Shown: positions 22,101 through 58,107 of the stretch, piece by piece
Layout of the letters: each line of letters starts with the position of its first letter
Numbering within the stretch: the first letter of the stretch is position 1
IMG/VR virus record: IMGVR_UViG_3300031997_000001
Coordinates: 171,459 to 235,458 of that record
Strand: one strand, 5' to 3'
Length of the DNA stretch: 64,000 bases
Program-made: the position numbers and the translations under genes
The notes under the pieces: model-generated
Databases searched by the model: none
What the model was told of the DNA's origin: nothing
Seen by the model: the letters and a program-made list of their open reading frames with translations, nothing else

Positions 22101-23675
22101 CCCCTTCTTGATTTCCTGTTCCGCTGCCGGACCCTGAGCTTCTCTTCCTTGCTTGAGCAGAAGTCTTCGTCGTTGGCGGCCGAAAACAGGTCGACGTCGC
22201 CGACGCGACCGGATGGGATCAGGATCTCTCCCGCCCTTAATTGAGGCTCTGGCAGGGAGGATGAATCCAGGTTCCTCATCCCCTCACCTCCTGTCTCAGG
22301 ATCCGCATGACGTTGCCGGTCAGCTCATGGACGTACGACGCCTCGATGTTGTGCCCCTTCCCGACGCAGGCCTTCGCCGCGTCCAGGTAGCGCCGCTCGA
22401 CCTCGTCCAGCGTGGCCAGAGAGGCGTCCTTCGCCAGCGCCAGGGCCTCGGTCGTGGCCCATCCGTTCCTCTCACATACCGACTTGAGGGAGATCCCGCT
22501 TTTTCGTCGTACTTCACCAAGAGCTTGTTGTGTATAGATCACATTGCCTCCTTGGATGCATCTCGGGCCTCACGGACGAGCAGGTCCATGGCTTCACCGA
22601 TGGTGTCCACCGGGCAGCACCAGGCACCGCCATACCAGAATCCCATCTTGTCCGTCCGCTGGTTCGGCGGGTAGAGCTCGCCCCAGTACTGACGGTGATA
22701 GGTCTTGCCCCACCTGGCGATCAGGACGACCTGCCAGTCCGCATCCATCCTGGCGAGGGCCTTCTTGGCGTCGTACGGGCTGTTGCGCGTCCAGATCTTC
22801 CGCCGCTTGCCCTTAAGCTTGTAGAACGACATAAGGCGTTGTATCGGCTTCACCGTGCCACCTCCTGGGAGGACGTTCCCGTTCCGCCGCACAGCGGGCA
22901 CGCCTCGGAGAAGAGGCCCGAATCGGGCACGCACCCCGCCCCGCGGCAGTAGGCGCACGCGTTCCTGCCGCCCTTGCTGCGGATCGCCAAGCCGGTCAGG
23001 ACCGCCCAGAGGCGGGCTACGACCACGCGGATCAGGAACATGGCCTACCTCCTGAAATACGGAAGGGGAATGGGAATCCGGAACTACATCTGGACGGCCT
23101 CGATCCGGAGATGTGCGTCGTGCGCCAGTTCGTCCAAGGTGGACTGGACGGCGGCGAGTGCCGCCTCGGGCGTCGACCCGTACCAGTGCATGCGACGGCT
23201 GTCGCTCCAGACGTCCCACGTCAGGCGGGTGTCGCCGCCCGGGTAGCTCCATGCGTCCACGCCGACGCACACGGAGTCGTCTGGCCCCAGGAGCTTGATG
23301 GCTGCAGCGAGCGTCTCGGCGAAGGTCATGGTCCAACCCCTAATTGAGTCCACGACGTTGATCCCCTCGGTTAGCCCCCCTCGTGCGGCTGCCTGAAGTC
23401 CTTCTCGAAGAACTCGAGGATCAGAGCGTCATACTCCTCGGGCGATGTCTTGAAACCGAATGAACGGTGCCTGGCTATTTCAGGAGACGGACCGTCAGCT
23501 CGACGGTCTGATTCGTCGGGTCCATGGGAATGATCAGGATCTTGTTCCCCTCGATCCGTACGCTACCGGCCCACCAGGTCTCGTCGCCGACCTGGATCGT
23601 CCAGTCGCCATGTCTCGCGCCCCCGTGGAACCCGAGAATCCCACCGATCGCCTTGGTCGCCTCGTTTTCGGTCAT
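19165..23675 (-). CDS. dense run of small hypothetical genes (about 60-170 aa each)
   Basis: Tiled ORFs with GGAGG RBS, e.g. 19165-19494, 20421-20777, 20803-21120, 21470-21781, 21793-22092, 22276-22542, 23084-23353, 23475-23675. Confidence 0.5.
21446..21467 (-). repeat. 22-nt leader motif GACCCGGGAATCTTGA(A/C)GAACC, copy 1
   Basis: 21/22 identical to 23773-23794; both lie just upstream of AAATGG(G)AGG. Confidence 0.7.
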
Positions 23676-23772
23676 CGGTTAGCCCTCCATGGGAAAGAGA
23701 CCCAGCCTTCTCGAGCTGGCGGATGTAAGTGCGGGTGCTTCGACCTTGCCCAGCTTCCTCCATTTCAGTTGC

Positions 23773-23794
23773 GGTTCGTCAAGATTCCCGGGTC
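23773..23794 (-). repeat. 22-nt leader motif, copy 2
   Basis: See 21446-21467. Confidence 0.7.
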
Positions 23795-24063
23795 TTCCTC
23801 CGGGAAAAAGAAAACTACTCACCTAGTGACTGGGGAGATTGACGTTCCTGACGTGGGAGAGACGGAGACCAGCCCACTCGCGGCGCCGTTGGCCAGCCCG
23901 AATCAACGGCCTGGCGCGTCGTCGCGGTCAGCCCGGTCTACGGGACGGAAGTGGGTCGCCACTTCCTGTACATTCACCGCATGGATGGGTCTCCTTTCCT
24001 GGGTCTGCACCTTGGAAGCAAACAGGAGGTCCACGTTCGTCCTCGGACGTCCCAAGAGCCTCA

Positions 24064-24157
24064 CGGGATCAGGACCCAAAAGCGCGGGCTGGCGGCGGGG
24101 CAACTCCCTGCCTGCTTCCGTTACGGAATACCAGCCCGCGCCCGTTGGATCATGAGC
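24064..24157 (-). terminator. terminator-like covarying hairpin with conserved flanks, copy 1
   Basis: 11-bp stem 24082-24092/24131-24141 followed by TTTTGGGTCCTGATCCCG; flanks shared with 25549-25620. Confidence 0.6.
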
Positions 24158-25548
24158 CGCACTGCACGAGCTTGAGCCTGACCAGATGGTCCAGCTTGAC
24201 CGTGAGCGGCCGGTGGAAGAAGTTCTTCGCGGGCCGATCCACCTTGCGGGGGTCCCGCTTGAACCACGCGGCGCTGGTCGAGTTGTCCTCCTGCTTCGGC
24301 ATGTCCCATCTCCTGAAAAGGCCGGAAACTGTGTCAGTGTCCGACGATCGCGTACTCCACCATGCCCTCCTTCACCGGCTTCTCGATCTTGTCCCAGTCC
24401 GCCTCATCGAGATCGGGGAAGGCCTCGCTGACCCGGTCTCCGTCCTTGAAGCCCTCGAAATCGATGTCCCGACCCTCGTTCTCGAAGAGGATCGTGCCTT
24501 CGTCCACCGTCCCGTCCTCGAACTGGACAGCCACCTTGACCTTGGTGAACGGACGCTCGAGGCCTGCGTACGTGGCTGACACGATCTTCATGTCCCCTCC
24601 TGAAACGTGGCCACTTCCCCTTCCCGGGGCGTCCGTGACCGGTCCAAACTGGTCCGTGTAAGCGTGTGAGTTGAAGAATTGATCCAAGAGGCCGGGTGCT
24701 GGTCTGCTGGTCGGGCTGGTCCTGCCAGACCGCGGCAACCCGAAACTCTCGAAACGACCGCGTCGCACGTGTTTCCGGCCCGAACGTTGCTGACCAGCCG
24801 TCCAGCCTTTCCGTCCGTCGGAATTAGTTGCTTGATGAACAGGTTGGCAATTGCCGATCCAATGCCCGTCCGTGGCACTCGGAATGGCAAGGAAACCCCG
24901 TCCTTGCCAACAGGTTACCTTTCTCTTCATGGATACCGAACTTCGGTCATCGTTCGGACCCATATTTGTGCGCCGACCTACGCGAGAAGCCGGTTCTCCT
25001 CGTCGTCGACGTAGACGATGGCCCGGTCCTCGGGGACGCCCTGCCTGCGCAGGTACTTGATCGCCTCATCTCTCGAGCTGGTCAGCAGGATCTCGACCAG
25101 CCGGTCCCGCATCTGCTGCGTCAGCTCGTCCATATTTTCACCTTCCTGGAAAGGGGCCGATCTCCCCGCGACGGGACGCCAGACCCGAATGAACGGTGTC
25201 CTGGCGGAGCCGGAGCGGACAGGTTTTATACGTCCTGTCCTCGTCGCGGTCAGGCCGGTCCTGAACCGGTTCGCCACCTGTCCAAAAGCCGATCTACCGA
25301 AGAGAGACATCTCTCTGTTCAGAAGTTTGGTGGACAGGTGGCGCTATGTAAGGAGTATTCGATTCCCTGCCTTTCTGGGTAGTTGCCTACCCTGTTTGGG
25401 TGCCTGACGTGCCTCAACCGGCCTGGCTCACGGCGGATCTCTCAGGCGGATTGGCCGGGGGAGATCGACACCTTCGGGGCATGTCCGCCCTCCTTTTGCG
25501 TGTGATGGGAGCTCTCGCTCCGAGCAGGTTGCCTGATCGTGCCCATTG

Positions 25549-25620
25549 CGGGATCAGGACCCAAAAGCACGGCCTAGGTCAGGCAATAATCGCCCAGGCC
25601 GCGCCCGTTGGACCATGAGC
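25549..25620 (-). terminator. terminator-like covarying hairpin with conserved flanks, copy 2
   Basis: 12-bp stem 25567-25578/25593-25604 with G-U pairs, same flanks. Confidence 0.6.
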
Positions 25621-25860
25621 CTAGGCCTTCTTCGCCTTCTTGAAGACGTTGAGGCCGAACGACACCCCGTCGTAGCCGGCGACCTTCGCGGTGCCGGACG
25701 CGATCAGGTTCGTCTTCCCGGACGAGCTGGGCCCGAGGTCGACGCCCAGGTCGACGACGAGGGTGAGCTTCCCGTCGGCGACGGACACGGAGATGTTGCG
25801 GGCGGCCTTGGCCACCTTCGCGACGACGGGCGACACGAGCGGCTGGGCGGCGGGCGACAT
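25621..25860 (-). CDS. small basic protein (DLGPSSSGKTNLIASG family), paralogue 1
   Basis: Alignable by eye to 28080-28301; GGAGG RBS. Confidence 0.75.
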   Translation of the reverse strand: MSPAAQPLVSPVVAKVAKAARNISVSVADGKLTLVVDLGVDLGPSSSGKTNLIASGTAKVAGYDGVSFGLNVFKKAKKA

Positions 25861-25913
25861 AGAGCCTCCTTGGTTGTGGCTCCGAAGAAAAGTGGAAGAC
25901 GGACAGGCTGATC

Positions 25914-25958
25914 AGCATCCAGGTCCTACGCGAGTGAACGTGCAGGCGGGTGGATGCT
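25914..25958. ncRNA. structured element (outer stem + CG-AGTGAA-CGTG hairpin), copy 1 of 3
   Basis: AGCATCCA/TGGATGCT outer stem around a conserved core. Confidence 0.55.
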
Positions 25959-26009
25959 CCTGAAGTGCAGGGAGCCCGGCAAGATTGCCGGGCCCCCGAC
26001 GGAGATGGC

Positions 26010-26345
26010 CTACGCCTTGGCCGCGAGGGCCTTGGCCTTGCACGCGCGGCACTGCCGCACGTGGAACAGATCGCTGGTGTAGACGATCCGGACCGCGCCG
26101 CAGTCGGCACAGTGGATGTCCACGGCCCACTTGCGGGCCACCTCGTCGTACCGGCGCGTCCCGGCGATGACGTGCGGGTACTTGGCGAGCAGCGCGGCCT
26201 CGGAGAGCGGGGCGGCGCGCTGGGCCCAGGGCGCGTCCTTCGGGAAGGTCCCGGAGACGCGGGGGGCGGGGGAGACGAGCGGCTGGCGGACGGCGACGGG
26301 CGCGGCGGCGACGAGCGGGGCCGCGGGGGCGAGCAAGCCCTCCAT
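26010..26345 (-). CDS. KYPH-type Zn-ribbon protein (paralogue 2)
   Basis: LLAKYPH..GT....KWAVDI.C..CG..R.VYTSDLFHVRQCRAC; GGAGG RBS. Confidence 0.75.
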   Translation of the reverse strand: MEGLLAPAAPLVAAAPVAVRQPLVSPAPRVSGTFPKDAPWAQRAAPLSEAALLAKYPHVIAGTRRYDEVARKWAVDIHCADCGAVRIVYTSDLFHVRQCRACKAKALAAKA

Positions 26346-26884
26346 GGTACACCTCCTGTAGAGAGTTGAAAAAGGACGTGGAAACGGACACGCTACCAGA
26401 CGACGTCGAGGCACTCCACGCCGAAGAGCGTTGCCGTCAGGTTACCCGCGCGCCGGATGATCTCATCCATGTCGGCGGCCTGCCAGACCACGCCAGTCGC
26501 TTCTGCGTAGGTGATGCCGATGTAGACTGCGTAACGCACGTTCCACCTCCTAGCGCGTGAGGGTCTGGCGGATCCAGACCCTGACCTTCCCGTTGTCGTG
26601 ACGGCCGACGACCCGCATCACCAGGCGGACTTCCCTGGCGACCTTCGCCACCATGACGCGTTCGGTCTTTGTCATGGCCTGACCCTCCTCACTTGTGCCT
26701 GGCGATGAAGTTCCGCAAGAGCGACGCGATCGGATCCGCTTCCTGACGCACGGACTCGTTCGAGCCGTCGCAGACCTTGTACAGCAGGGCCATTGCCGCG
26801 GCCAGGATCTTCACCTGGTCGGGTTTGAGGGCGTCCTCTGGCATGGGACCCTCTTAAAAGACGCGCTCGCAAAACGCCAAAGCC

Positions 26885-26934
26885 AGAGTTCCCAGTTCCT
26901 GACACGAGTGAACGTGCAGGCGGGTGGGAACTCT
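26885..26934. ncRNA. structured element, copy 2 of 3
   Basis: AGAGTTCCCA/TGGGAACTCT perfect outer stem, same core. Confidence 0.55.
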
Positions 26935-27327
26935 CCTGTCTTGTAGACGCGCTTACGCGCGTCCCTCGGCCTGGGCCTGCAGGAACTCGGGCTCCTGCTC
27001 CCGCCGCTCCTGGGCGTCGGGTCCCAGCCGCTCGATGACGGAGAAGCGCAGGGTCGAGGCCCGGTCCGGCTCGCGCCGGAACCGCTTCTCCGTGAGGCTG
27101 ACGCGCATCGTCTTGACGCGGGGCATGTTTGCCCTCCTTATAAGACGAGCCACAAAAATGCCAAGATTCCCACGAACGCGAGCACGCCGGCGATCGTCTT
27201 CCCCCAGCTCTCCTCGGGCACGTTCGGTCTCCTGACTAGGCCGCGATGTTGTAGACGCGCCAGTGGTCCTCGCAGCGTGGGAAGTCCGCCTCCTGTCAGG
27301 CGGGGCCACGCTGCCGCTCCCGGTCTC

Positions 27328-27579
27328 TCACCCCCGGGTGCACGAGGGCGTGCACTCCTGACAGAAGCGCACCTGCCAGAGGTCCGACACGAGGACCTCC
27401 CTGCGCCTCTCGCACCTGCACTGGCAGGTGCACTCGATCTTGCACGCCCACTTGAGGTGGGTGGCGTCGAAGTGGAGGCTGCCGGGCACGAAGTGCGGGA
27501 AGCGGCGGATCAGCTTCCCCTCGTCCATCGGGCGGCGCAGGACGGACGCCACGCCGGCGAGGATGTTCGCGCTCTTCAT
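27328..27579 (-). CDS. KYPH-type Zn-ribbon protein (paralogue 3)
   Basis: LIRRFPH..GS....KW...I.C.C..C.RR..V.VSDLWQV.FC..C. Confidence 0.7.
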   Translation of the reverse strand: MKSANILAGVASVLRRPMDEGKLIRRFPHFVPGSLHFDATHLKWACKIECTCQCRCERRREVLVSDLWQVRFCQECTPSCTRG

Positions 27580-27676
27580 GTTGCGTCTCCTGAGAAAGGG
27601 TTAATGTGGCAAAAGCGGCAGGCAAATCCGCCTCCTGGGTCGAGGGAGGCGGCCTTGCACGCCGGCTCAGTCGTCG

Positions 27677-27982
27677 TTAGTGGACCTTGAGGAAGTCGTC
27701 GCCGAGCACGGGGGCGTCGGCCAGGAGCGCCTTCACCTCGGCCTCCACCTCGGGGATCGGCGAGGGCGCGCCCTCTCCGTAGCTGCTGTACTCCACCCAG
27801 GGCGACGAGCCCGGGTACCTTCCCCCGTTGGGCTTCAGGTTGCGGGTGGACACGGCGTAGTCGCCGTGCCCGCGCTCCCTGTAGTCGACCATGACCAGGA
27901 GCGGGCCGCCGAAGTTGGCGAGCTCCACGACTCCCATGAGGCTGATCTCGTCGAGGCAGGTGCGGGCGGACATGATCTTCAT
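27677..27982 (-). CDS. hypothetical protein
   Basis: GGAG RBS; 101 aa. Confidence 0.6.
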   Translation of the reverse strand: MKIMSARTCLDEISLMGVVELANFGGPLLVMVDYRERGHGDYAVSTRNLKPNGGRYPGSSPWVEYSSYGEGAPSPIPEVEAEVKALLADAPVLGDDFLKVH

Positions 27983-28010
27983 GTTCGGTCTCCTGTGAGG
28001 GCCAAAACCT

Positions 28011-28056
28011 GAGCGCCAGGTCCCGCGCGAGTGAACGTGCGGGTGGGCTGGCGCTC
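28011..28056. ncRNA. structured element, copy 3 of 3
   Basis: GAGCGCCAG/CTGGCGCTC outer stem, same core. Confidence 0.55.
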
Positions 28057-28079
28057 CCGTATTGGCGCTCCCGTCTGGT

Positions 28080-28301
28080 CTACTTGTACCAGACGTTGAG
28101 GCCGAAGGACGCCCGGCCGCTGAAGCCGGGGATCTTCGCGGTGCCGGTCGCCACCAGGTTGGACTTCCCGGTGCTGGACGGGCCGAGGTCCTGCGTCATG
28201 TCGACGCGCAGGACGAGCTCGGTGCCGACGACCTCGACGCGGATGTTCCGGGGGGCGCGGACGATCTTCGCGACCTTCTCCGCCTGGATGAGTGCCTGCA
28301 T
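28080..28301 (-). CDS. small basic protein (DLGPSSTGKSNLVATG family), paralogue 2
   Basis: GGAGG RBS, ATG at 28301; similar to 25621-25860. Confidence 0.75.
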   Translation of the reverse strand: MQALIQAEKVAKIVRAPRNIRVEVVGTELVLRVDMTQDLGPSSTGKSNLVATGTAKIPGFSGRASFGLNVWYK

Positions 28302-28337
28302 CGCATCACCTCCGTGAAGGGGGACGCAAATTCGCCT

Positions 28338-28444
28338 TCCCGAGCTCAGGAGACTCGGGAGCCGGCGCAAGATCCCGCTTCCTCTGGCTCGGGGAAGCGG
28401 GATCGCGTGCCGTGGGCGCCCACCCAAAGATCGGGTGGGCGCCC
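28338..28444. other. three tandem perfect hairpins
   Basis: Stems 28338-28344/28354-28360, 28371-28382/28393-28404 (12 bp) and 28414-28425/28433-28444 (12 bp). Confidence 0.7.
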
Positions 28445-28460
28445 GGTCGGGTCGCTGTGT

Positions 28461-28793
28461 CTACCGGCCGGCCTTGCAGGCGCGGCACTGGCGCACGTGC
28501 CAGAGGTCGCCGGTGTACAGCGTGCGGACCGCGCCGCACGCGCACCGGATGTCCACGGCCTGCTGCCCCCGGGCGGGGCACTTGCGCAGGGTGCCGGGGA
28601 TCATGTGCGGGTATTTGGCCAGCAGCTGCGCCTCCGTCAGCGGGGCGGCGCGGACCCAGACGGGGCGGGGGCCGACGAGCGGGGCGGCGGGGCCGGCGAC
28701 CAGCGGGGCGCGGGCGGGGGGGGGGGGGGGCCCGACGAGGGCGGAGACGCGGCGGACGGCGACGGGCGCGGCGGGGGCGAGGAAGCCGACCAC
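28461..28793 (-). CDS. KYPH-type Zn-ribbon protein (paralogue 4)
   Basis: GGAGGTGTCCC-GTG start mirrors GGAGGTGTACC-ATG of 26345; LLAKYPH...DLWHVRQCRAC. Confidence 0.7.
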   Translation of the reverse strand: MVGFLAPAAPVAVRRVSALVGPPPPPARAPLVAGPAAPLVGPRPVWVRAAPLTEAQLLAKYPHMIPGTLRKCPARGQQAVDIRCACGAVRTLYTGDLWHVRQCRACKAGR

Positions 28794-28814
28794 GGGACAC
28801 CTCCGTTGTGTGCC

Positions 28815-29095
28815 GGGCCGGCGGGCCGCGGGCGCGCCCCCGGGACAGGCGGGGGCGGGACGCGGGGCCGGACGCGGCGGACGCGGGCGCGCCCCCCGGA
28901 CGGCGGGGGGCGGGCGCGGGGCCGGGGTCGGGGTCCCCCCCCCGCCGGGGGCGGGGGGCGGGCGGCGGGCGGGCCCCCCGGCGGGGGGGCGGCGGGGCCG
29001 CCGGGGGCGGGGGGCGGCGGGGGCCGGGGGGCCGGGGGGCCGCGCCGCCCCGCCCCCCCCGGGGGCCGCGGCGGGGGGCGGGCGGGCGGTCCCGT
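28815..29095. other. almost pure G/C low-complexity tract (possible base-calling artefact)
   Basis: Very few A/T, long G and C runs; the many overlapping ORFs here are spurious. Confidence 0.7.
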
Positions 29096-29123
29096 TTCGG
29101 ATCGCTTCTCGGCGAGCGCATCG

Positions 29124-30611
29124 CGTACGCGGAGGGTTCGAACTATGCCGCTGATCGTCAGTTTTGAACCAAAGATAGGACATGAGGTTATCGCAGCTCT
29201 GCGAAGGTTGGCGCCGCATTTCATATGACAAGCTCGCCTCACGACTGGCTGAGGCCGTCATACTCGGACTCAAGCGGCACTTCATCCCAAAGAGCAAGAC
29301 GGAACTGTCGAAGAATACGACGTTCTATATAAAGGTCGCCAAATGGGACAGAGATCCATGGAATCCGCCGCCTAAAGCAGCAGCAGTAGACATCCTCCCC
29401 CCAGACACCACGAAGCTCATTCAGGACATGTTCAAGGACACCCTGACACATGTAGCTAGGGATTTTACTCTCCGCGTAGAAGTAAAGGATGTTCAGCTCT
29501 GGCACGCGGGCTTGGCGTTTTTACGCCGTTCTGACGACGAAGCGGACATATCTATCAACATTTATTGTCACCATGAGTGGGAGCTTGGATGGGGAGGAGT
29601 GCAAAAGAGTTTGAGCATGACGTATAAGAGCGTTGCACAAGTCCTGCGGCATGAACTAGAACACCTGAGGCAATATGGATCTGGTGAAAAGCGCGACGCC
29701 TATGACGCACGTAAAGACTGGTTCGCGAAATCAATGGTCAGGAACCTCGCCCCACGCGTCGTGTCTATGCCCCACTACGGCAATGCTAAGTATTATAACT
29801 GGATCACGGACGTTCACGAAATAGGTGCAATGGTTACGGACATCCATTTCAGCGCACGAAGAAGGGGAGTATCGTTCGAAAAAGAATTACAAAGACGCCT
29901 AGCGGAAGATGAGAGAAGGCTGAAGGAAGAGGGGATCCCGGACGATCTGATTGCAGACATCACCAAGAGATGCTGGGATTTCGCAGCGAAGAAGTATCCA
30001 GGACTCATTAAGAAGCAGGTACCCGAACTGAAATCCTCGGAGCCGGTTGTTCCTCCGACCGGATGAGATCTCCTATAACGAAATGCGGGACTGCGGCTCA
30101 GGCATCCAGAAGGTCCGGTTCCCTCCAGGCCGCTGACCAGCAGTTTTTCGTGATTTTCGTCGAACTATGCCGCTGACCTGCTGGCTAGCCTTTCTCGCGC
30201 GTCACATGCGTACGTGGAGGGTTCGAACTATCCGCCGGAATTGAGGCTGCCGGAGACGGGTGAACTGGGTGCCAGACCGGAAGACAAGTTCCGGGCACCC
30301 AGGTCACCACCAAGCGGAAGTCCGACGCGAGTGAGTGGTGGAGGTGAGGGTAAGAAGCTGGATGGCATCCATCCGCTGTTCACAAAACCTATCTGGATGC
30401 TTCCGCACACGAGCAGGTTGTACAATGCGTATTCAGGAGAAAGGCCCTGTAGGACCTGTCCGCACCAGGGACAGAACCGGTGTCCGGTGGCGTAGTTGAC
30501 CCCGCCGGACTGCGAATTCGAAAGCTGACATGTGCAGTAAGGCACGCCCTATTTACGCGGGAGGCAGGGATTCCGGACGCGTCGCACGCGCACGCGTTGC
30601 CTTCGAACTAT
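29124..30611 (+). repeat. four direct copies of TCGAACTAT, with longer shared flanks
   Basis: 29124-29154, 30160-30176 (17 nt identical), 30209-30236, 30602-30611. Confidence 0.7.
29182..30066 (+). CDS. HExxH metallopeptidase-like protein with MRLxxLxE N-terminus
   Basis: VLRHELEH, later HEIGA; starts MRLSQLCE. Confidence 0.65.
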   Translation: MRLSQLCEGWRRISYDKLASRLAEAVILGLKRHFIPKSKTELSKNTTFYIKVAKWDRDPWNPPPKAAAVDILPPDTTKLIQDMFKDTLTHVARDFTLRVEVKDVQLWHAGLAFLRRSDDEADISINIYCHHEWELGWGGVQKSLSMTYKSVAQVLRHELEHLRQYGSGEKRDAYDARKDWFAKSMVRNLAPRVVSMPHYGNAKYYNWITDVHEIGAMVTDIHFSARRRGVSFEKELQRRLAEDERRLKEEGIPDDLIADITKRCWDFAAKKYPGLIKKQVPELKSSEPVVPPTG

Positions 30612-30936
30612 TCAAAGGTAGGGTATGAAGCAGACCTGCAAGTGCGGTGAGCCTCTGCCGCCCGAGGTCCAGGCGAAGATAGAAAGCCTCAAGCTGGTCC
30701 TCTCAGAATCACTCCCTTACCTGACGCACAGCGCCACGCTCTCCAAGGACCTGGTCCCATGGTCCGAGGCGCTGGTCCAGAAGGTCCACAAGGTACTGTT
30801 CCTGGATCCGTAGGCTGGAGAAGTCCCGATCCTATGATCTCTAATACCCGCTTCAAGCTCATCGCCGCCTTCATCATCCTGTGTCTGCTCTACGCCCTGA
30901 CGCTCGCCATCATAGGGCGGATGAGCTGACCGGATT

Positions 30937-33354
30937 CTAGGACGCACAGGCCCGCTCACATCTCTGTCTGCTCGCGGAGGCAATCCGCCTGTCGAGCGCT
31001 AGCTGGTCCCCCTTGAGCGGATAGCCGATCCGCCTTATGACTCCAAAGTATTCCCCTACGACGTCATGGCCGCACCAGTTCATGTACCTATCGTGTGTAT
31101 CTCTCCAGGCGGACCGGTCGCCGTAAAGGGCGTTGACGATGGTATTGTCTCTGGGATTCTGCAGGTCGTAGAGGTCCCGCTCGTGGAAGACGCGCCAGGC
31201 CCAGAAGTCCACCAGCCAGCGGCCGTCGATGAGGCAGAAGTCGTGGCCGAGGTCCTTAGCGACGATCACCGCGCTGTCGTTGGCCGGCCATCCGTGCTCG
31301 CGCCCGTGGGTGTAGCCTATCTGCTGTCCGTTGAACTCCCAGGTGAAGATGGCGGCGGTCCAGGAGCACATGCCGTACAGATCCCTTCCCGTCACGGGGT
31401 CCTTGACGAAGCCATGCGCGCACTCCCACCTATATTGGCGGCGGAGGCGCGCGAGCTCCCTCCGGATCTCCCTAGGCTTGTTCACCTTCGGGGTCCTCCG
31501 CGTTCGATCTTCTTGCGCATGGCCTTGATCTCATCCGCGTCTAACAGACAGGCCCCGGCAAAATAGTGGTCCCGGATGCGGTCGTGCGAGCGCGCCCTCG
31601 CGAGACATCTGCCTTCCGCCCACCGCAGTGCATCAGCCAGGACGGCGCGGATCAGGACTGCGGTGGACGCGATCCTCCGCCCTTGCGTCTCATGGGAACG
31701 CCCCTTGACGCATCGCTCTGCATATTCATGCGGATCGATCATAGTCTCTACCCCTTGACTTCCTGCGCAGGCGCGGTAGCCTTGATCAGGTGGCGTATCT
31801 GGTCGACGTCGTACTGCGCCTTGATCCATCCGTCATGGGACTTGCCGCCCGGGGCGAAGTCGGCGCTCCCGCTCATCCACTGGACGAGCCCCCATGCCAG
31901 GTGGAGTGCCTCCTTCAGCCGGCTAGTCTCCGTGTCATCCAATTTCGCTTTCAGTACGTCCCGCTCAGTGCAGTACTCCAGTCTCGCTTTCAGGGCGTCC
32001 CGCTCAGTGCAGTACCGGCGCGCCTCCTGATTGGCTTCCGAGAGGCTGGCCTCCAGCGCGGCTATTCGTTTGGATGACTGTTCCGCCTCGACCGCCATCT
32101 CCGTGAAGAGCCTTGGATCTATCATGGATTAGCCCCTAAAGAAGTATATCAAAAACCCGGGTCAGGAATGTCGTGAGATATCTAGTTCCAGTTCCGAAGG
32201 GTCATAATGGCCCACCGTCCCATCCTCGTGCTGGACTTCGTAACAAAGGCCGTGGGAGTCGTGGTGCTTGAGGATAGTCCCCTTGACGCCCCATTTCCTG
32301 GACGCCAGAGCTTCTCCGGTCCAGTCACCGCGGCCAGACCAGAAAGGCTTTGTGGTCTTCACCTTCGTACCGGGGTCCAGAGGGGGCCATTTCTTCACGT
32401 CGGGTGTATGGTCAGCAAGGCCGCCAGCAGGGATTCCAGGGTTTTGGCCTTCCACGATCCCTTCTACGAGCTTTTCTGCCTCGGCTATGTTGACCCTGAC
32501 GTCATAAGCTACCCGCCCGAACGCCAGGGATTCCGCTATCCACTTGATCAGCGGACGAAGCTTGGGATCGTCCAGCTTTCTGATCCTGTCAATGGCCTCC
32601 TCGCGGGTCAAGAGAGTGAAGTCGATGTCCGCTTGTGCGCCCTCGCGCCATGCAGCGCCCTCTGCCTTCAGCGCATCTCGCTCAGCAGTCAGAGTGGCGA
32701 TGCGTTTCTCGTATGCGGCCTCCACACAGGTTATCCGAGTCCGCAACATATCGCATTCCTGCACTAGACCGTTTACTCCGGCCTTCAGTGCATCCCGCTC
32801 GTCGGTCAGTGCATCAATTCGCGCCTCGTGACTTGTAGGGTCGCCCACTTTGTGCCTCCTGGTTACTTGATGACGATCTTGTGCAGTGCTTCCGCGGCGA
32901 TGTGAAAGCAGGGTCCAGCTGGCGAAAGGTCGCATCCGGGCCCGTCTTCCTTGCAGACCGCCTGGAGGGCGGCTACTGCTAAGTCCAGCTTCTCGGTCAG
33001 GGACCTCTCGGGTTCCAGCCGCAGGAAGCGTAGCTGCGTAGGGCGCAAGCCGAGGTCAGGATTTTCTGGCACAGTACTCTTCCTTAATAGTGCTGTGGCA
33101 ACAGGGCCGATCCAGTGACCTCACCGTCGAGGCGTACTCCGCACAGTTTGGCTCTTTCGCCTGTCCATCCGGGCCAGCGACCGCTTGAGCCTGGACGCCT
33201 GGATGTTGACGATCTTGGTGCCGAGGTAGTTGCCCTCGGGGCCTCTGAATTCCACGACAACCTCTATCCGGCCCTTGCACTCGTAGTACCAGGACTTGGC
33301 ATCGATCTTCTGAGGTCCCCGGCGCCCCAGGCTGCATCTCGTCTGTCTGGTCAT
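30937..33354 (-). CDS. run of hypothetical genes (30937-31485, 31748-32125, 32162-32935, 32863-33072, 33121-33354)
   Basis: Tiled ORFs; recurring coiled-coil motif [TA]ERDALKA. Confidence 0.55.
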
Positions 33355-47730: not shown

Positions 47731-48713
47731 ATTATTGATTTGGCGTGCTCGAGCATCTTATCCGCCTCCCCTACAAATCCTACCGTCCTCAGCAACCCCG
47801 CCAGCCTGTGGAAATAAGTGTGCCCGTCCAGGATGTCCCTTCGCTGTCTCCGGGCGAGTTCCTGCCGCTGTGGTTCCATCTCCGGTCTGGACCATTTGAC
47901 ACAGAGCTCTATGAACTCCATCGGCCCATTCGCCATAACGATGTTCGGCGAGAATCGTTCCAGGCCCTTTATAGGATCGTGGACGGCCAGGGCGCCACAG
48001 AGGATGACCTTGAATGCCCGCTCTGGTAAATCTATTCCCCATTGCGTGGTATGGGGTTCGGCAACGCAGGGGCAGACTCGGCATCTCGAAAAGAAACCAG
48101 CCACGTCCTCGTCCCGAATGACACCAGAGCTGATCCCGGGCTGCCAACCGCCCCAGCCATGGACTTTACAGCCAAGTGTCTTGTTTGAGAAAAGGGGGAA
48201 CAGGTATCTGTCCAAATTCTTGGCCTTGTAATCCCAGCGACCGCCAACGTACCCTATGGGGATGTCGCGCGGCACCGGGGCGTTTGTTAGACCTTGCCTG
48301 GAATAGAAGACAGTGGCATCCCCGGCCGTAGCCATCGGCACCCAAGGGATGCCATGTTTTGAAGTCCAATACTCCCAGAATCTCCCGTCGTCTTTGTGGC
48401 CGTATCCGAATACGGCATCTGGCCGTTGCGCGAGAGTCCAGTTTATAGCCTCCTGTGGCTCATCAATGCCTTTAATTTTTTCTGGCCCGTAAGGGTTCAC
48501 ATGGACGGCCAATTTTGTTCTGCCGCGCGGTGCGGGTATGGGTTGGCGGTGGCCAGAACATGCGATTATCAGATCCGGATCAAATATATTCCAGGAGCTT
48601 TGTTTGCCGTCCCAGCGTTGCGCTTGGTGACCCGCGGCAATGAAGGCATTGAGCCATCCATCTGATATGAAGCTGAAAGCGCCCCCGGGTCTATGTGGTA
48701 ATAGCACGCGCAT
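47727..48713 (-). CDS. CgeB-like (GT-B) glycosyltransferase
   Basis: DIPIGYVGG, CKVHGWGGW, PERAFKVILCGA, HTYFHRL. Confidence 0.75.
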   Translation of the reverse strand: MRVLLPHRPGGAFSFISDGWLNAFIAAGHQAQRWDGKQSSWNIFDPDLIIACSGHRQPIPAPRGRTKLAVHVNPYGPEKIKGIDEPQEAINWTLAQRPDAVFGYGHKDDGRFWEYWTSKHGIPWVPMATAGDATVFYSRQGLTNAPVPRDIPIGYVGGRWDYKAKNLDRYLFPLFSNKTLGCKVHGWGGWQPGISSGVIRDEDVAGFFSRCRVCPCVAEPHTTQWGIDLPERAFKVILCGALAVHDPIKGLERFSPNIVMANGPMEFIELCVKWSRPEMEPQRQELARRQRRDILDGHTYFHRLAGLLRTVGFVGEADKMLEHAKSII

Positions 48714-49812
48714 ATCATCTATGTACTTTTTGCCAATAGATTCGCAGCATCGGCGACTAAAGATAGGTACTATCGTCGGCCATCTAAAAGTGGTGAGTCG
48801 CCCTTTTCATATGCAACATGAACCAAAGCGCGTTTTCTATAAATTCTACTGCGAATGTGGTAATAAATGCGTAAAGTGCATATCAGAAGTGAATTATGTG
48901 GCAAAATCATACCCGCCACATTGTGGGTGCCGCGCAAGGGAACATTTATCAAGAAGCCAAACTAATCTTACCCCAAGGTGCAACGTATGTGGCACTACCG
49001 AGTTATCCCGCTTCAGACCAAAACGCAAGAATATTTGTTATGAGTGTAGGAAATTAAAGAAAAGACTAGAAAGTAGAGAAAGGCAAAGTAGCCCGGCTAG
49101 GCGACGGCAGCACAACGACTCCATAAAACAACACAGAGAGAGCACTCCGGAAAACTTCCTCAGATCCGCTCTGGCAAGGCTACGAAAACCTTGCGATTTT
49201 GGCATTGAATACCTAATGCAGCTATGGGAACGTCAAAATGGAAGATGTAAAGCCACCGGCATTAAAATGACACACTGCTTTAGACATCTTCTTTCAGTAT
49301 CTATTGACCGCATCGATAACAATATGGGGTATAACAAAGGAAATATTAGACTGGTATGCAAATGGGTAAATTTGGGCCGTCGAAGACATACGGCCAGAGA
49401 ATTTAGAGAAACACTAAAACAGTTTAGAAATGGCGGCGGTCGGGAATACAATACCAATGATACCAAAATCAGAACATACTTCAGGCATTTATTCCGAGTA
49501 ATAAGACAACGTATTCATAGCAAAATATTCAAAAGACGAAAGGGTTTTAACCATAACTTAACGCTCTATTTCTTATGTGATCTTTATAAGAGTCAAAAAG
49601 GACGATGCGCTATCACGAAAGTGCCGATGAGACTCCAGGGAGGTCATCTAAATTCCTGTAGCATCGACAGGATAGAGAATTCGACTGGCTATCTAAAGGA
49701 TAACATCCAATTGGTATGCGTGTGGGTCAATTTGGCTCGGAGCTATCACGCGTTAATTGAATTTAAAAGAATGCTCCGAGCACATCAATCTAAATGCCCA
49801 GGCTATCCATGA
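48640..49812 (+). CDS. HNH-type endonuclease with two tandem nuclease domains (likely start 48721)
   Basis: GRC..T.....SIDRI.N..GY...NI.LVC.WVNL.R occurs twice; markedly lower GC; antisense insertion. Confidence 0.8.
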   Translation: MKALSHPSDMKLKAPPGLCGNSTRISSMYFLPIDSQHRRLKIGTIVGHLKVVSRPFHMQHEPKRVFYKFYCECGNKCVKCISEVNYVAKSYPPHCGCRAREHLSRSQTNLTPRCNVCGTTELSRFRPKRKNICYECRKLKKRLESRERQSSPARRRQHNDSIKQHRESTPENFLRSALARLRKPCDFGIEYLMQLWERQNGRCKATGIKMTHCFRHLLSVSIDRIDNNMGYNKGNIRLVCKWVNLGRRRHTAREFRETLKQFRNGGGREYNTNDTKIRTYFRHLFRVIRQRIHSKIFKRRKGFNHNLTLYFLCDLYKSQKGRCAITKVPMRLQGGHLNSCSIDRIENSTGYLKDNIQLVCVWVNLARSYHALIEFKRMLRAHQSKCPGYP

Positions 49813-56425: not shown

Positions 56426-56959
56426 TTACACGCTGCCGGCGTCCCTGAGCTCCTGTCTCTTGAAGCCCGCCAATGACCGCAAGTGCTCAGACTTCATCTT
56501 TAACGCCTCTACGATGTTGTAGAGCTTGCCGGAGGACCTCTGCGCGATTAGGAGCTCCGCTTCCAGCTTCTCTAGAATGTCATCTGCTTCGATGAGCTCC
56601 TTTATGTCTGCGGCGCGCAGGGAGACACCCTCCGCCTTTGCCGTGTTAAGGATCTGCTCTGCGACGATGGCCCTGCGCCTCTTTATCTTGCGCTCAAAGA
56701 CGCCGACGACCATCTTCTGTTCACTCATGACTCCGGCCCAGTAGGAAAAGGCGCTTGGCGTCCTTGCAAGCTGCTCTTCGAGATTGTCGTAGTCTATTTC
56801 TACGTCGGTCCTAAAGTCCCGAGAGATAGTTCCGCCGCCTGGCACCTTGACGTGGATGCGGACGACGATGTTCGCAACGTCCTCCGGGATGTTGTCGGCA
56901 AACCATTTGTTCTTGGGAGCTGTCATCGGATTTCCTTGTAAAGCTTCCATTTCTTCCAA
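56426..56959 (-). CDS. UvsY-like recombination mediator
   Basis: Helical; ID..L..QL...P..F.YW...EALKMKS..LRS; sits next to the SSB gene. Confidence 0.55.
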   Translation of the reverse strand: MEEMEALQGNPMTAPKNKWFADNIPEDVANIVVRIHVKVPGGGTISRDFRTDVEIDYDNLEEQLARTPSAFSYWAGVMSEQKMVVGVFERKIKRRRAIVAEQILNTAKAEGVSLRAADIKELIEADDILEKLEAELLIAQRSSGKLYNIVEALKMKSEHLRSLAGFKRQELRDAGSV

Positions 56960-58107
56960 TGACGGCCGACGTAAATCCGGAGCGGAAACGTCGGATTGCT
57001 GTCCAGTATGTCCTTGAACGGATGGAGCATGGCTTCGACGCCGACGTTCAGAACCTCCTTGATCGCGTGCCTATTCGCCGCCAGAGTAATCGAGTCGTGC
57101 ATCTCTGCCACGATGCAGTCGGGCATCGCCTTGTAAATCTGCCAGAGGGCACTATGCATGGCGTGCACCACCGTCCCCTGGAGCGAGGCGTTAAATACGC
57201 TCCTCATATTGTGGAGAGGATCGCCTTCTGTAGCCATCCGGAACCTTCTACCCAGGACGGACTCCGTCCAGCCTCTGTTTTCCAGCTTAGCCTTCTCGAC
57301 GGCGACCCATTTCTGAAGATCCGGCCAGAACTGAAGGGCCGGGCTATCCTGGTCCATTTCGTAGAGAGCGCGAATCATCATGCTCTTGCAGTCTGCCCGG
57401 GTCAGATCTCCCTTCGCCATGACGGTGTAGGGGTCGGACTTCCTGAAGGCTTCTGCAAGAAGCTCGTCTCCGCTCAGGATCTGACCAGCCTTAAGATCTG
57501 CCGAGATCCAGTCCAGATGGATGAAATAGGATTTTTCTTCATCGGGGTGCTTTACGTCGTAAGACGCATCCGTCCCTTGGACGTTGAAACCTAGCGTCTT
57601 TGACCGGCCGCTGACCGTGTTGAGGATATATCGAGGATAGGCGAGAAGGTGACCATTCATGAGGCCACGCTTCTGGAGCATACGATAGACCTGCGTGGCT
57701 CTTCCGAGCAGTTTCATCCAGGGAGCGGGCTGGATGCTGGCAACGCCACGGACGAGCTTCTCGCAGATCTCCTTGGCCCTCTCGGCGGACAACGTACCGT
57801 AATTCGGCTGCTTCGGGATGCCAAAATCCCAGACGTTAAACGGATGCGCCAGTAGGTTGCATTCGCGGTCCAGGAAATCAAGGACCGTTTTGAAGTCGTT
57901 CATCGTTACGGCGGGAAGAGGACTCCCTTTGAATTCTCCAAGGATGGCCTTTGCGCTCTCCCAGACCGTCTTCAAGCTGAGACCGACGCCAGAGAGAAGC
58001 AGGGGGTACGATCTGACGGCATCACTCCCGTCGTCCATGAAGGCAGCCATGAGCGGACGAGAGGACTGCTTCGTGTACTGACACATTACGAAGGCGTGCT
58101 TGGACAC
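56923..58107 (-). CDS. minimal, divergent family-A DNA polymerase-like protein
   Basis: SGR...FNVQ, motif A HLDWISADLK, motif B R..CK.......Y, NASLQGT, motif C EMHDS; no exonuclease domain visible. Confidence 0.7.
   Translation of the reverse strand: MSKHAFVMCQYTKQSSRPLMAAFMDDGSDAVRSYPLLLSGVGLSLKTVWESAKAILGEFKGSPLPAVTMNDFKTVLDFLDRECNLLAHPFNVWDFGIPKQPNYGTLSAERAKEICEKLVRGVASIQPAPWMKLLGRATQVYRMLQKRGLMNGHLLAYPRYILNTVSGRSKTLGFNVQGTDASYDVKHPDEEKSYFIHLDWISADLKAGQILSGDELLAEAFRKSDPYTVMAKGDLTRADCKSMMIRALYEMDQDSPALQFWPDLQKWVAVEKAKLENRGWTESVLGRRFRMATEGDPLHNMRSVFNASLQGTVVHAMHSALWQIYKAMPDCIVAEMHDSITLAANRHAIKEVLNVGVEAMLHPFKDILDSNPTFPLRIYVGRHWKKWKLYKEIR

What the first reader, a model, noticed from the sequence alone, without database searches (positions are those of the whole stretch)
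25914..28056. Three copies of a two-tier hairpin with invariant CG-AGTGAA-CGTG core and fully covarying outer stem
Seen: the outer stems differ completely in sequence (AGCATCCA, AGAGTTCCCA, GAGCGCCAG) yet each pairs perfectly. They enclose the same asymmetric junction and an inner hairpin with an AGTGAA loop. One inner pair is A-T in one copy and G-T in two, which favours folding of the plus strand, antisense to the surrounding genes. All three are intergenic, upstream of minus-strand starts. I do not recognise a known Rfam motif. Inference: a novel cis-regulatory RNA or small RNA family, or DNA hairpin promoter/protein-binding sites.
Basis: partly seen in the sequence, partly recalled or inferred. 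Interest (0 to 1): 0.65.

Follow-up and report, generated by a model that had tools for sequence, protein, structure and literature searches.

The report
Covarying intergenic hairpin family in jumbo phage
Three intergenic sites in an uncultivated 235-kb phage genome carry the same two-storey hairpin, whose lower stem changes by compensating mutations while its tip stays fixed; it is a real, previously uncatalogued structured element, most likely an RNA signal between genes, but its function is unproven.

Summary
Three two-tier hairpins lie at 25914-25958, 26885-26934 and 28011-28056. They share an exact 13-mer found nowhere else in the 235,458-bp virus genome.

I found 15 distinct versions, all in close relatives of this phage from sediment metagenomes. 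Ten of 18 base pairs show changes on both sides; 86% of cells pair, against 28-41% when the partners are slid. No Rfam family matches.

Wobble pairs specific to each strand are equally common (10 against 11).

Every copy has the same orientation as the surrounding genes. In that sense orientation each copy has a conserved 5' linker (ACAAKAC..GGAG), sits 17-54 nt after a stop codon, and usually follows another small hairpin. Copies are gained, lost or partly deleted among strains.

Simple GC hairpins capped by the same CG-UUCACU-CG tip occur just after stop codons in unrelated viral contigs more often than a control loop does.

My best reading is a sense-strand RNA "punctuation" hairpin within a long operon of small unknown genes, acting in attenuation, processing or end protection, with the tip recognised by some factor. 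Antitermination, RNase III cleavage, an antisense RNA and DNA-level roles all remain open.

The parts
25914..25958 (-). hp1: two-tier hairpin. Outer stem AGCATCCA/TGGATGCT, inner stem 8 bp with one mismatch, hexaloop UUCACU in the sense (minus-strand) reading.
   Evidence: CM hit of 70 bits
26885..26934 (-). hp2: two-tier hairpin. Outer stem AGAGTTCCCA/TGGGAACTCT, inner stem fully paired with one bulged base, same loop.
   Evidence: CM hit of 77 bits. Strain variants carry compensatory outer-stem changes and the loop variant 26910 G>A.
28011..28056 (-). hp3: two-tier hairpin. Outer stem GAGCGCCAG/CTGGCGCTC, inner stem CCCGCACG/CGCGCGGG (sense reading), same loop.
   Evidence: CM hit of 69 bits. 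One related contig lacks 34 bp of it.
25959..25969 (-). Sense-strand 5' linker of hp1 (..TTCAGGAG type). It corresponds to the conserved ACAAKAC..GGAG flank of the family.
   Evidence: alignments
26935..26945 (-). Sense-strand 5' linker of hp2 (ACAAGACAGG, running into the stem).
28057..28073 (-). Sense-strand 5' linker of hp3, plus a second copy of the 11-nt repeat GGCGCTCCCGT (28047-28057 and 28063-28073). The second copy offers an alternative partner for the other arm of the outer stem.
25970..25997 (-). Companion GC-rich hairpin between the stop codon of gene X3 and hp1. It shows a compensatory change in relatives.
26946..26963 (-). Companion 7-bp hairpin (GACGCGC/GCGCGTC) spanning the stop codon of the 57-aa gene, just upstream of hp2 in the sense reading.
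25621..25860 (-). Gene Y2 (79 aa, small all-beta ORFan), directly downstream of hp1. It is a paralogue of Y1 (28080-28301).
26010..26345 (-). Gene X3 (111 aa, C-terminal CxxC..CxxC zinc ribbon), directly upstream of hp1. It is a paralogue of X2 (27328-27579) and X1 (28461-28793).
26689..26844 (-). 51-aa ORFan downstream of hp2.
26953..27126 (-). 57-aa ORFan upstream of hp2.
27677..27982 (-). Gene Z (101-aa ORFan) downstream of hp3.
28080..28301 (-). Gene Y1 (73 aa) upstream of hp3.

Best explanation
The three sites are copies of a module of about 56-60 nt that works on the window's minus strand, which is the mRNA-sense strand of all neighbouring genes.

The module has these parts:
- a short single-stranded linker (ACAAKAC..GGAG);
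- a basal helix of 8-10 bp whose sequence is free but must pair;
- a C/A-rich asymmetric internal loop;
- an apical 8-bp helix (CCYGCACG/CGYGCRGG);
- a hexaloop UUNNNU (UUCACU in the window), closed by invariant C-G and G-C pairs.

It lies inside a long leftward operon of small genes of unknown function that starts near 28.8-29.2 kb.

I propose that it folds in the transcript and acts as an intercistronic punctuation signal. It would attenuate transcription and/or mark a processing point and then cap a transcript end against exonucleases. The invariant tip would be the part read by a host or phage factor.

Shown here: the structure, the covariation, the fixed orientation, the intergenic placement after stop codons, the restriction to one phage lineage, and modular gain and loss among strains.

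Inferred: that the active form is RNA, that it is the sense strand, and what it does.
For: Structure and selection:
- Ten of 18 pairs have changes on both sides. 85.8% of cells pair, against 28-41% with slid partners, and 0 of 500 shuffles reach any of the five measures.
- Flanking paralogous proteins are only 33-58% identical, yet a core of 13-23 nt is identical between copies. The tip is therefore under sequence selection and the base under structural selection.

Orientation and placement:
- All 15 distinct copies, in 9 contigs, have the gene-sense orientation.
- The conserved 5' linker exists only in that reading.
- Copies lie 17-54 nt after a stop codon and 29-53 nt (one 115 nt) before the next start codon, usually behind another hairpin.
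- U-rich runs follow hp2 and hp3, and a terminator-like hairpin with a T-run follows hp2 and the L112 copy.

Analogy elsewhere:
- Among viral contigs matching CCNNNNCG-TTCACT-CGNNNNGG, 11 of 79 (8 independent) are fully paired hairpins. Nearly all extend beyond the pattern.
- For seven of the loci checked by ORF listing (L194, L198, L240, L225, L219, L221, L227), the hairpin lies 10-250 nt after the stop of a co-oriented ORF, five of them within 10-30 nt. Three (L211, L225, L227) are followed by T-runs.
- The permuted control loop gave 3 of 119 fully paired, none extended.
- A Microbacterium genome has the same 22-nt tip on a 14-bp hairpin 12 nt after a stop codon.

Dispensability: hp3 is partly deleted in one strain and absent with its gene cassette in others. 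The X-to-Y spacer exists with and without the module.
Against: - No RNA data exist for this phage. All 24 sequencing runs that hold it are DNA runs.
- Both strands fold about equally well. The antisense strand is on average more stable, by up to about 6 kcal/mol in single copies.
- A passive terminator or stabiliser does not need a conserved tip or a conserved linker.
- hp1 has no U-tract. In L112 it is flanked by separate hairpins that could already do those jobs.
- The simple scan did not call any of the three as an intrinsic terminator.
- The host, and hence its RNases and polymerase, is unknown.
Confidence: 0.35

Rival explanations
1. Processive antitermination site. The linker plus hairpin would act like lambda nut (boxA plus boxB, bound by a phage protein) or HK022 put (RNA acting directly on RNA polymerase). 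Polymerase could then read through the many hairpin and T-run terminators that punctuate this promoter-poor operon.
For: A linear conserved motif is followed by a hairpin with an invariant tip and covarying stems, always in the sense orientation. Terminator-like hairpins with T-runs lie just downstream of copies or further along the same operon, directly before ribosome-binding sites and with no room for a promoter (L112, L155, and downstream of hp2). No sigma-70-like promoter was found in 23-32 kb. Zinc-ribbon X paralogues co-occur with the hairpins in every relative.
Against: No antiterminator protein was identified; X and Y have no fold or family match. Copies recur about every 1 kb rather than once near the promoter. 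The hairpin is much larger than boxB and is a single hairpin, unlike the two of put. This idea does not explain the same tip on plain hairpins after stop codons in unrelated genomes. Terminator-like sites are not significantly enriched (9 found, 5.9 +/- 2.7 expected).
Confidence: 0.2
2. RNase III-type processing site, as in phage T7 early mRNA. A host double-strand-specific RNase would cut in or near the internal loop of the two-tier hairpin and separate the cistrons, leaving a protective hairpin.
For: The architecture is the same as T7 sites such as R1.1, from my own knowledge: lower stem, asymmetric internal loop and upper stem, placed between cistrons, in several paralogous copies. The stacked helices total 16-18 bp. 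An A-rich single-stranded linker lies between two hairpins.
Against: RNase III does not require a conserved loop or tip. The L112 copy lacks the 5' half of the internal loop. The phage encodes no RNase III domain and the host is unknown. There are no cleavage data.
Confidence: 0.15
3. DNA-level element. It could be an extruded hairpin or cruciform acting as a promoter (N4-like) or protein-binding site. It could instead be a small mobile or recombinogenic palindromic cassette (like T4 PeSL or bacterial REP) that shuffles the small genes.
For: The module is present or absent as a discrete unit of about 56 nt in orthologous spacers. The region is highly mosaic, with cassettes present or absent among strains. 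Chimeric alleles of hp2 exist (L107). There are three copies upstream of genes, as with the three N4 early promoters (my own knowledge).
Against: No T7/N4-type polymerase was found, and the two giant ORFs are collagen-like tail fibres. N4 promoters have stems of 5-7 bp and 3-nt loops, which is not this geometry. No sigma-70-like promoter lies nearby. The mapped indel joints (25993/26510, 26391/26552, 27137/27601) do not fall in the hairpin cores. The outer arms are not conserved, unlike REP or MITE ends, and there are only three copies per genome. The strictly fixed orientation relative to transcription fits an RNA role better.
Confidence: 0.13
4. Plus-strand (antisense) small RNA or cis-antisense regulator.
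For: The pair at CM alignment columns 30-41 is A.C on the sense strand but G.U on the plus strand in 7 of 15 copies. The plus-strand fold is more stable by up to about 6 kcal/mol in several copies. The plus-strand loop AGUGAA contains a GNRA-like GUGA.
Against: Sense-only wobbles are equally numerous and spread over more columns. The loop variants GUUA, GCUA and AUGA break the GNRA pattern. No promoter-like or terminator-like signals were found on the plus strand around the sites. All neighbouring genes are on the other strand. The conserved flank reads as a linker plus GGAG only in the sense direction.
Confidence: 0.07

Closest known systems
Phage T7 RNase III processing sites (R0.3-R18.5; for example R1.1)
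   Same: Intercistronic position. Two stacked helices separated by an asymmetric internal loop. Several paralogous copies in one phage genome, in the sense orientation.
   Different: Here the tip (loop and closing pairs) is the most conserved part, which RNase III does not need. The helices total only 16-18 bp. One copy lacks half of the internal loop. There is no cleavage evidence, and the host is unknown.
Lambda nut (boxA-boxB) and HK022 put antitermination RNAs
   Same: A conserved linear motif followed by a hairpin with an invariant loop and covarying stems. Several copies in an operon that contains terminator-like hairpins. Acts, if at all, in the sense transcript.
   Different: A single large two-tier hairpin rather than a 15-nt boxB or the two hairpins of put. 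Not promoter-proximal: the copies lie about 0.8-3.3 kb into the operon. No N-like protein or polymerase contact is known.
T4-type PeSL (promoter-early stem-loop) regulatory cassettes
   Same: A repeated intergenic motif with a stem-loop in a hyperplastic region of small ORFan genes that differ among related phages.
   Different: No sigma-70-like promoter accompanies the hairpin. The conserved part is inside the hairpin. The mapped indel joints do not fall in the repeats.
Intrinsic terminators and 3'-end protective hairpins, including the CG-UUCACU-CG-capped hairpins found here in other viral contigs and in one Microbacterium genome
   Same: GC-rich hairpin shortly after a stop codon in the sense orientation. 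Identical loop and closing pairs. U-rich runs after two of the three copies.
   Different: Two-tier with an internal loop. The U-run is absent (hp1) or displaced by 3-4 nt. There is a conserved tip and a conserved 5' linker, which plain terminators lack.
Phage N4 early hairpin promoters
   Same: Three copies upstream of genes. The hairpin would form on the template strand, where the G.T pair is allowed.
   Different: N4 hairpins have stems of 5-7 bp and 3-nt loops. No virion RNA polymerase candidate exists in this genome.

Membership tests
Any Rfam 15 family | Covariance-model score at or above the family's gathering threshold | tested here: not met
   No matches in the 64-kb window at gathering thresholds. 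In E-value mode on 25800-28200 nothing overlaps the hairpins.
Intrinsic (Rho-independent) terminator | GC-rich hairpin shortly after a stop codon on the transcribed strand | tested here: met
   The copies lie 17-54 nt after stop codons in the sense orientation, with free energies of -23 to -37 kcal/mol.
Intrinsic (Rho-independent) terminator | Run of U starting within about 0-2 nt of the stem | tested here: not met
   hp1 has none. In hp2 and hp3 the U-run starts 3-4 nt after the stem. The scan did not call any of the three.
T7-type RNase III site | About two helical turns of duplex interrupted by an internal loop, placed between cistrons | tested here: inconclusive
   16-18 bp in two helices with an internal loop of 4 nt on the 5' side and 2-3 nt on the 3' side. 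The L112 copy lacks the 5' half of the loop.
T7-type RNase III site | Cleavage by RNase III | not testable with these tools
   No RNA reads were available. The phage has no RNase III domain.
Lambda nut / HK022 put | Conserved linear box plus hairpin(s) in the sense transcript, upstream of terminators | tested here: inconclusive
   A linker ACAAKAC..GGAG plus a hairpin is present. Terminator-like hairpins lie downstream in some spacers. There is no sequence similarity to boxA, boxB or put, and no Rfam hit.
Lambda nut / HK022 put | Increases terminator read-through, with a cognate protein or by direct action on RNA polymerase | not testable with these tools
   Needs transcription assays.
N4 hairpin promoter | Stem of 5-7 bp with a 3-nt loop on the template strand | tested here: not met
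   The inner stem is 8 bp with a 6-nt loop, inside a second helix.
N4 hairpin promoter | Phage-encoded single-subunit (virion) RNA polymerase | tested here: not met
   PF00940 is absent, although that search also found nothing in the control genomes. The 3738-aa and 2395-aa ORFs are collagen-like tail fibres. The other large ORFs carry an intein, a tail-protein domain or no Pfam match.
T4 PeSL cassette | Sigma-70-type early promoter joined to the stem-loop | tested here: not met
   No promoter-like sites in 23000-32000. The host consensus is unknown, so this test is weak.
T4 PeSL cassette | Lies in a hyperplastic region and flanks variable ORFan cassettes | tested here: met
   Cassettes are present or absent among strains. 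All neighbouring genes lack family matches.
REP / MITE-like mobile palindrome | Conserved terminal inverted repeats and many copies per genome | tested here: not met
   The outer arms differ between copies. There are only three copies in 235 kb.

The most novel reading that the evidence does not exclude
The module is a new, lineage-specific cis-acting regulatory RNA. Its invariant CG-UUCACU-CG tip would be read by a dedicated factor, possibly the co-occurring zinc-ribbon X proteins or RNA polymerase itself, to switch elongation through the operon's terminators (a new put- or nut-like antitermination system). It would spread between intergenic spacers as a discrete hairpin cassette of about 56 nt.
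Probability: 0.2. Interest if true: 0.7.

Novelty: new variant of a known kind. Interest (0 to 1): 0.45.

Why it matters
Phage intergenic hairpins are common, but few are defined as families with real covariation, and almost none come from uncultivated jumbo phages. This one has an unusual pattern: an invariant tip on a freely covarying base, plus a conserved linker. That pattern points to sequence-specific recognition rather than a passive terminator. It sits in a fast-evolving block of small unknown genes, probably early or host-takeover genes. If it proves to be an antitermination or processing signal, it would give a handle on how such gene arrays are expressed, and a compact portable RNA part. 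The recurrence of the same loop on hairpins after stop codons in unrelated GC-rich viruses hints at a more general loop preference or factor worth testing. If it is only an attenuating hairpin, it is an ordinary feature, now well documented.

Tried and rejected
- **Rfam.** Nothing at gathering thresholds or in E-value mode.
- **Cultured phages.** No DNA match. No X or Y relatives. Replication proteins are only 24-40% identical to any cultured phage, so neither host nor clade could be named.
- **Pattern scans for the core.** In viral contigs only one related 107-kb contig was found. In prokaryote genomes there was no family member.
- **RNA evidence.** All 24 runs holding the stretch are DNA runs of sediment metagenomes. 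Laying four of them gave strain variants only.
- **Promoter idea.** No sigma-70-like sites. By eye the core does not fit a sigma-54 -24/-12 promoter, because the GG is missing. No T7-like polymerase, sigma-70 region 2 or RNase III domain is encoded.
- **Genes X and Y as partners.** Pfam, PHROGs and the ESM Atlas gave nothing. The AlphaFold models (pLDDT 75 and 68) have no significant PDB fold match. I did not run a complex prediction, because nothing beyond neighbourhood suggests binding.
- **Other resemblances considered by eye and dropped.** These were a CRISPR type I-F repeat, group II intron domain 5, a tRNA T-arm and CsrA GGA sites. The geometry or key residues do not fit, and Rfam models for the relevant families did not hit.
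- **TTCCAC / GTTTCCACGT motif as a genome-wide promoter.** It is not enriched genome-wide.
- **CGTTCACTCG as a host-wide motif in Microbacterium.** There are only 5 copies and one hairpin.
- **Failed script.** One script was killed by the sandbox and was rerun.
Full report
**What the window is.** The window is the last 64 kb of a single 235,458-bp IMG/VR virus record, 57% G+C and estimated 97% complete. It is a jumbo tailed phage. It encodes a gp32-like single-strand-binding protein, a RecA/UvsX recombinase, a DnaB-type helicase, a family A polymerase fragment and glycosyltransferases. It also has two collagen-like tail-fibre ORFs of 3738 and 2395 aa. No cultured phage is close, and the DNA is found only in sediment metagenomes. 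The genome has no tRNA genes in the window. It has no T7-like RNA polymerase, no sigma-70 region 2 and no RNase III domain.

**The observation.**
- Each has a perfect outer stem of 8-10 bp, an asymmetric C/A-rich internal loop, an 8-bp inner stem and a six-base loop.
- The 13-mer CGAGTGAACGTGC occurs exactly three times in the whole genome. A covariance model finds no further copies there.
- Both strands fold into the same two-tier shape, with z-scores down to -4.5.
- The outer stems share only their top three pairs (CCA/TGG).

**Gene context.**
- All genes around the hairpins are on the minus strand, are small, and have strong AGGAGG-type ribosome-binding sites. None matches Pfam or PHROGs.
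- Two paralogous families recur. X has a C-terminal CxxC..CxxC zinc ribbon: 28461-28793, 27328-27579 and 26010-26345. Y is a small all-beta protein: 28080-28301 and 25621-25860.
- Read in the sense direction, the order is X1, Y1, hp3, Z, X2, two tiny genes, hp2, three tiny genes, X3, hp1, Y2.
- In relatives the operon starts at a divergent junction just upstream of X1.
- Nearly every spacer in this stretch holds one or more strong hairpins unrelated in sequence to the three. The region has the highest G+C and the highest hairpin density of the genome.

**Relatives and covariation.**
- Exact-core scans found the element only in close relatives of this phage. These are one 107-kb IMG/VR contig and five sediment metagenome contigs.
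- Homologues of protein X led to further contigs.
- A covariance model built from 12 variants recovered 15 distinct copies. Some are diverged, with the loops UUAGCU, UUCAUU, UUAACU and UUUACU and with a changed inner stem.
- On the model alignment, 10 of 18 pairs carry changes on both sides. 85.8% of cells pair, against 28-41% when partners are slid. None of 500 shuffles reaches any of the five measures.
- An independent MAFFT alignment gives the same picture.
- The invariant positions are the two outermost pairs of the inner stem, two of its inner pairs, the two closing pairs, and the first, second and last loop bases.
- No member occurs in 185,579 prokaryote species genomes.

**Which strand.** It does not survive a wider sample. 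Ten wobble cells work only on the sense strand and eleven only on the antisense strand. The antisense-only ones are almost all in a single column. Minimum free energies are slightly better for the antisense strand in some copies. Three other features favour the sense strand:
- Every copy is co-oriented with the genes.
- A conserved linker, ACAAKAC..GGAG, sits immediately 5' of the hairpin in the sense reading.
- U-rich runs or a terminator-like hairpin with a T-run follow several copies in that reading.

**Modularity.**
- The spacer between X and Y exists in three states. L155 has a terminator-like hairpin with a T-run only. L112 has a GC hairpin, the module and a terminator hairpin. The window has a GC hairpin plus the module, with the terminator stem lost.
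- One related contig has a 34-bp deletion that removes the loop and half of hp3. A simple hairpin remains, formed through a nearby 11-nt direct repeat.
- Other strains lack the whole cassette containing hp3.
- Population contigs show several cassette indels, but their joints are not in the hairpin cores.

**The same tip elsewhere.** I scanned viral contigs for CCNNNNCG-TTCACT-CGNNNNGG. Of 79 matches, 11 (8 independent) are fully paired hairpins, and nearly all extend further. A permuted loop gave 3 of 119, none extended. For seven of the loci checked, the hairpin lies 10-250 nt after the stop of a co-oriented ORF, five of them within 10-30 nt, and three are followed by T-runs. A Microbacterium genome carries the identical 22-nt tip on a 14-bp hairpin 12 nt after a stop codon. 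The motif is not frequent in that genome, however.

**Interpretation.** The basal stem is under structural selection. The tip and linker are under sequence selection, because the flanking paralogous proteins have diverged to 33-58% identity. Orientation is tied to transcription. The simplest reading is a sense-strand RNA element between cistrons.
- I commit, at modest confidence, to a punctuation role: attenuation and/or processing with end protection, with the tip recognised by a factor.
- The main rival is a nut- or put-like antitermination signal. That would explain the conserved linker and tip, and the terminator-like hairpins that lie directly before ribosome-binding sites.
- RNase III processing fits the two-tier shape but not the conserved loop.
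- DNA-level roles and an antisense RNA are less likely, but are not excluded.
- Proteins X and Y gave no clue.

**Verdict.** This is a real, uncatalogued, lineage-restricted structured element of a known general kind (phage intercistronic hairpins), with an unusual conservation pattern. Its function is unproven. 

Noticed in passing
viral contigs L194, L198, L203, L211, L219, L221, L225, L227, L240, L183/L169; genome locus L378: GC-rich hairpins capped by CG-UUCACU-CG recur in unrelated viral contigs and in one Microbacterium genome. For most of those checked they lie shortly after the stop of a co-oriented ORF. They are more frequent than with a permuted control loop (11 of 79 against 3 of 119). 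This could reflect a preferred terminator hexaloop or a site for some factor.
   Followed up: partly
window 26373-26390 (minus strand) and genome position 128499-128516 (plus strand, outside the window): An identical 18-nt motif, TGTCCGTTTCCACGTCCT, lies about 20-30 nt upstream of two start codons. Related TTCCAC(T/G)T motifs sit between the hairpin and the ribosome-binding site in several relatives. The motif is not enriched genome-wide.
   Followed up: partly
L154:2078-2106 and L155:934-945: The perfect palindrome GGAAACGTTTCC (two tandem copies in L154, one imperfect copy in L155) lies immediately upstream of the hairpin module in the more distant relatives. It looks like an operator. It is absent from the window.
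   Followed up: partly
window 28800-29060: An extreme G/C-run low-complexity tract lies in the divergent spacer upstream of X1. It creates long spurious ORFs rich in Pro, Gly, Ala and Arg in several frames, and many overlapping inverted repeats.
   Followed up: no
window 27272-27314 and 27620-27660: Two further hairpins share the inner motif TCCGCCTCC. The first is also two-tier: outer stem GCAGCGTGG/CCACGCTGC, inner stem CCGCCT/AGGCGG. Two-tier hairpins are therefore a general feature of these spacers.
   Followed up: no
window 23700-29200: This is a hyperplastic region. Cassettes at 25993-26510, 26391-26552, 27137-27601 and about 27676-28470 are present or absent among strains in the same sediments. 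G+C is 64-67%, against 57% for the genome.
   Followed up: partly
genome 48939-52619 (outside the window; locus L028): A 1226-aa ORF carries an intein (Hint domain plus LAGLIDADG endonuclease).
   Followed up: no
genome 76810-88026 and 89476-96663 (outside the window; loci L026, L027): Two giant collagen-like tail-fibre ORFs of 3738 and 2395 aa.
   Followed up: no
window 48640-49812 (plus strand): An HNH / endonuclease VII-like gene lies in the lowest-G+C segment of the window (48%), next to a 639-aa glycosyltransferase on the opposite strand. It may be a mobile insertion.
   Followed up: no
window 56923-58107 (minus strand): This ORF matches only the C-terminal part of family A DNA polymerase, below the Pfam threshold. 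The polymerase may be split or highly diverged.
   Followed up: no
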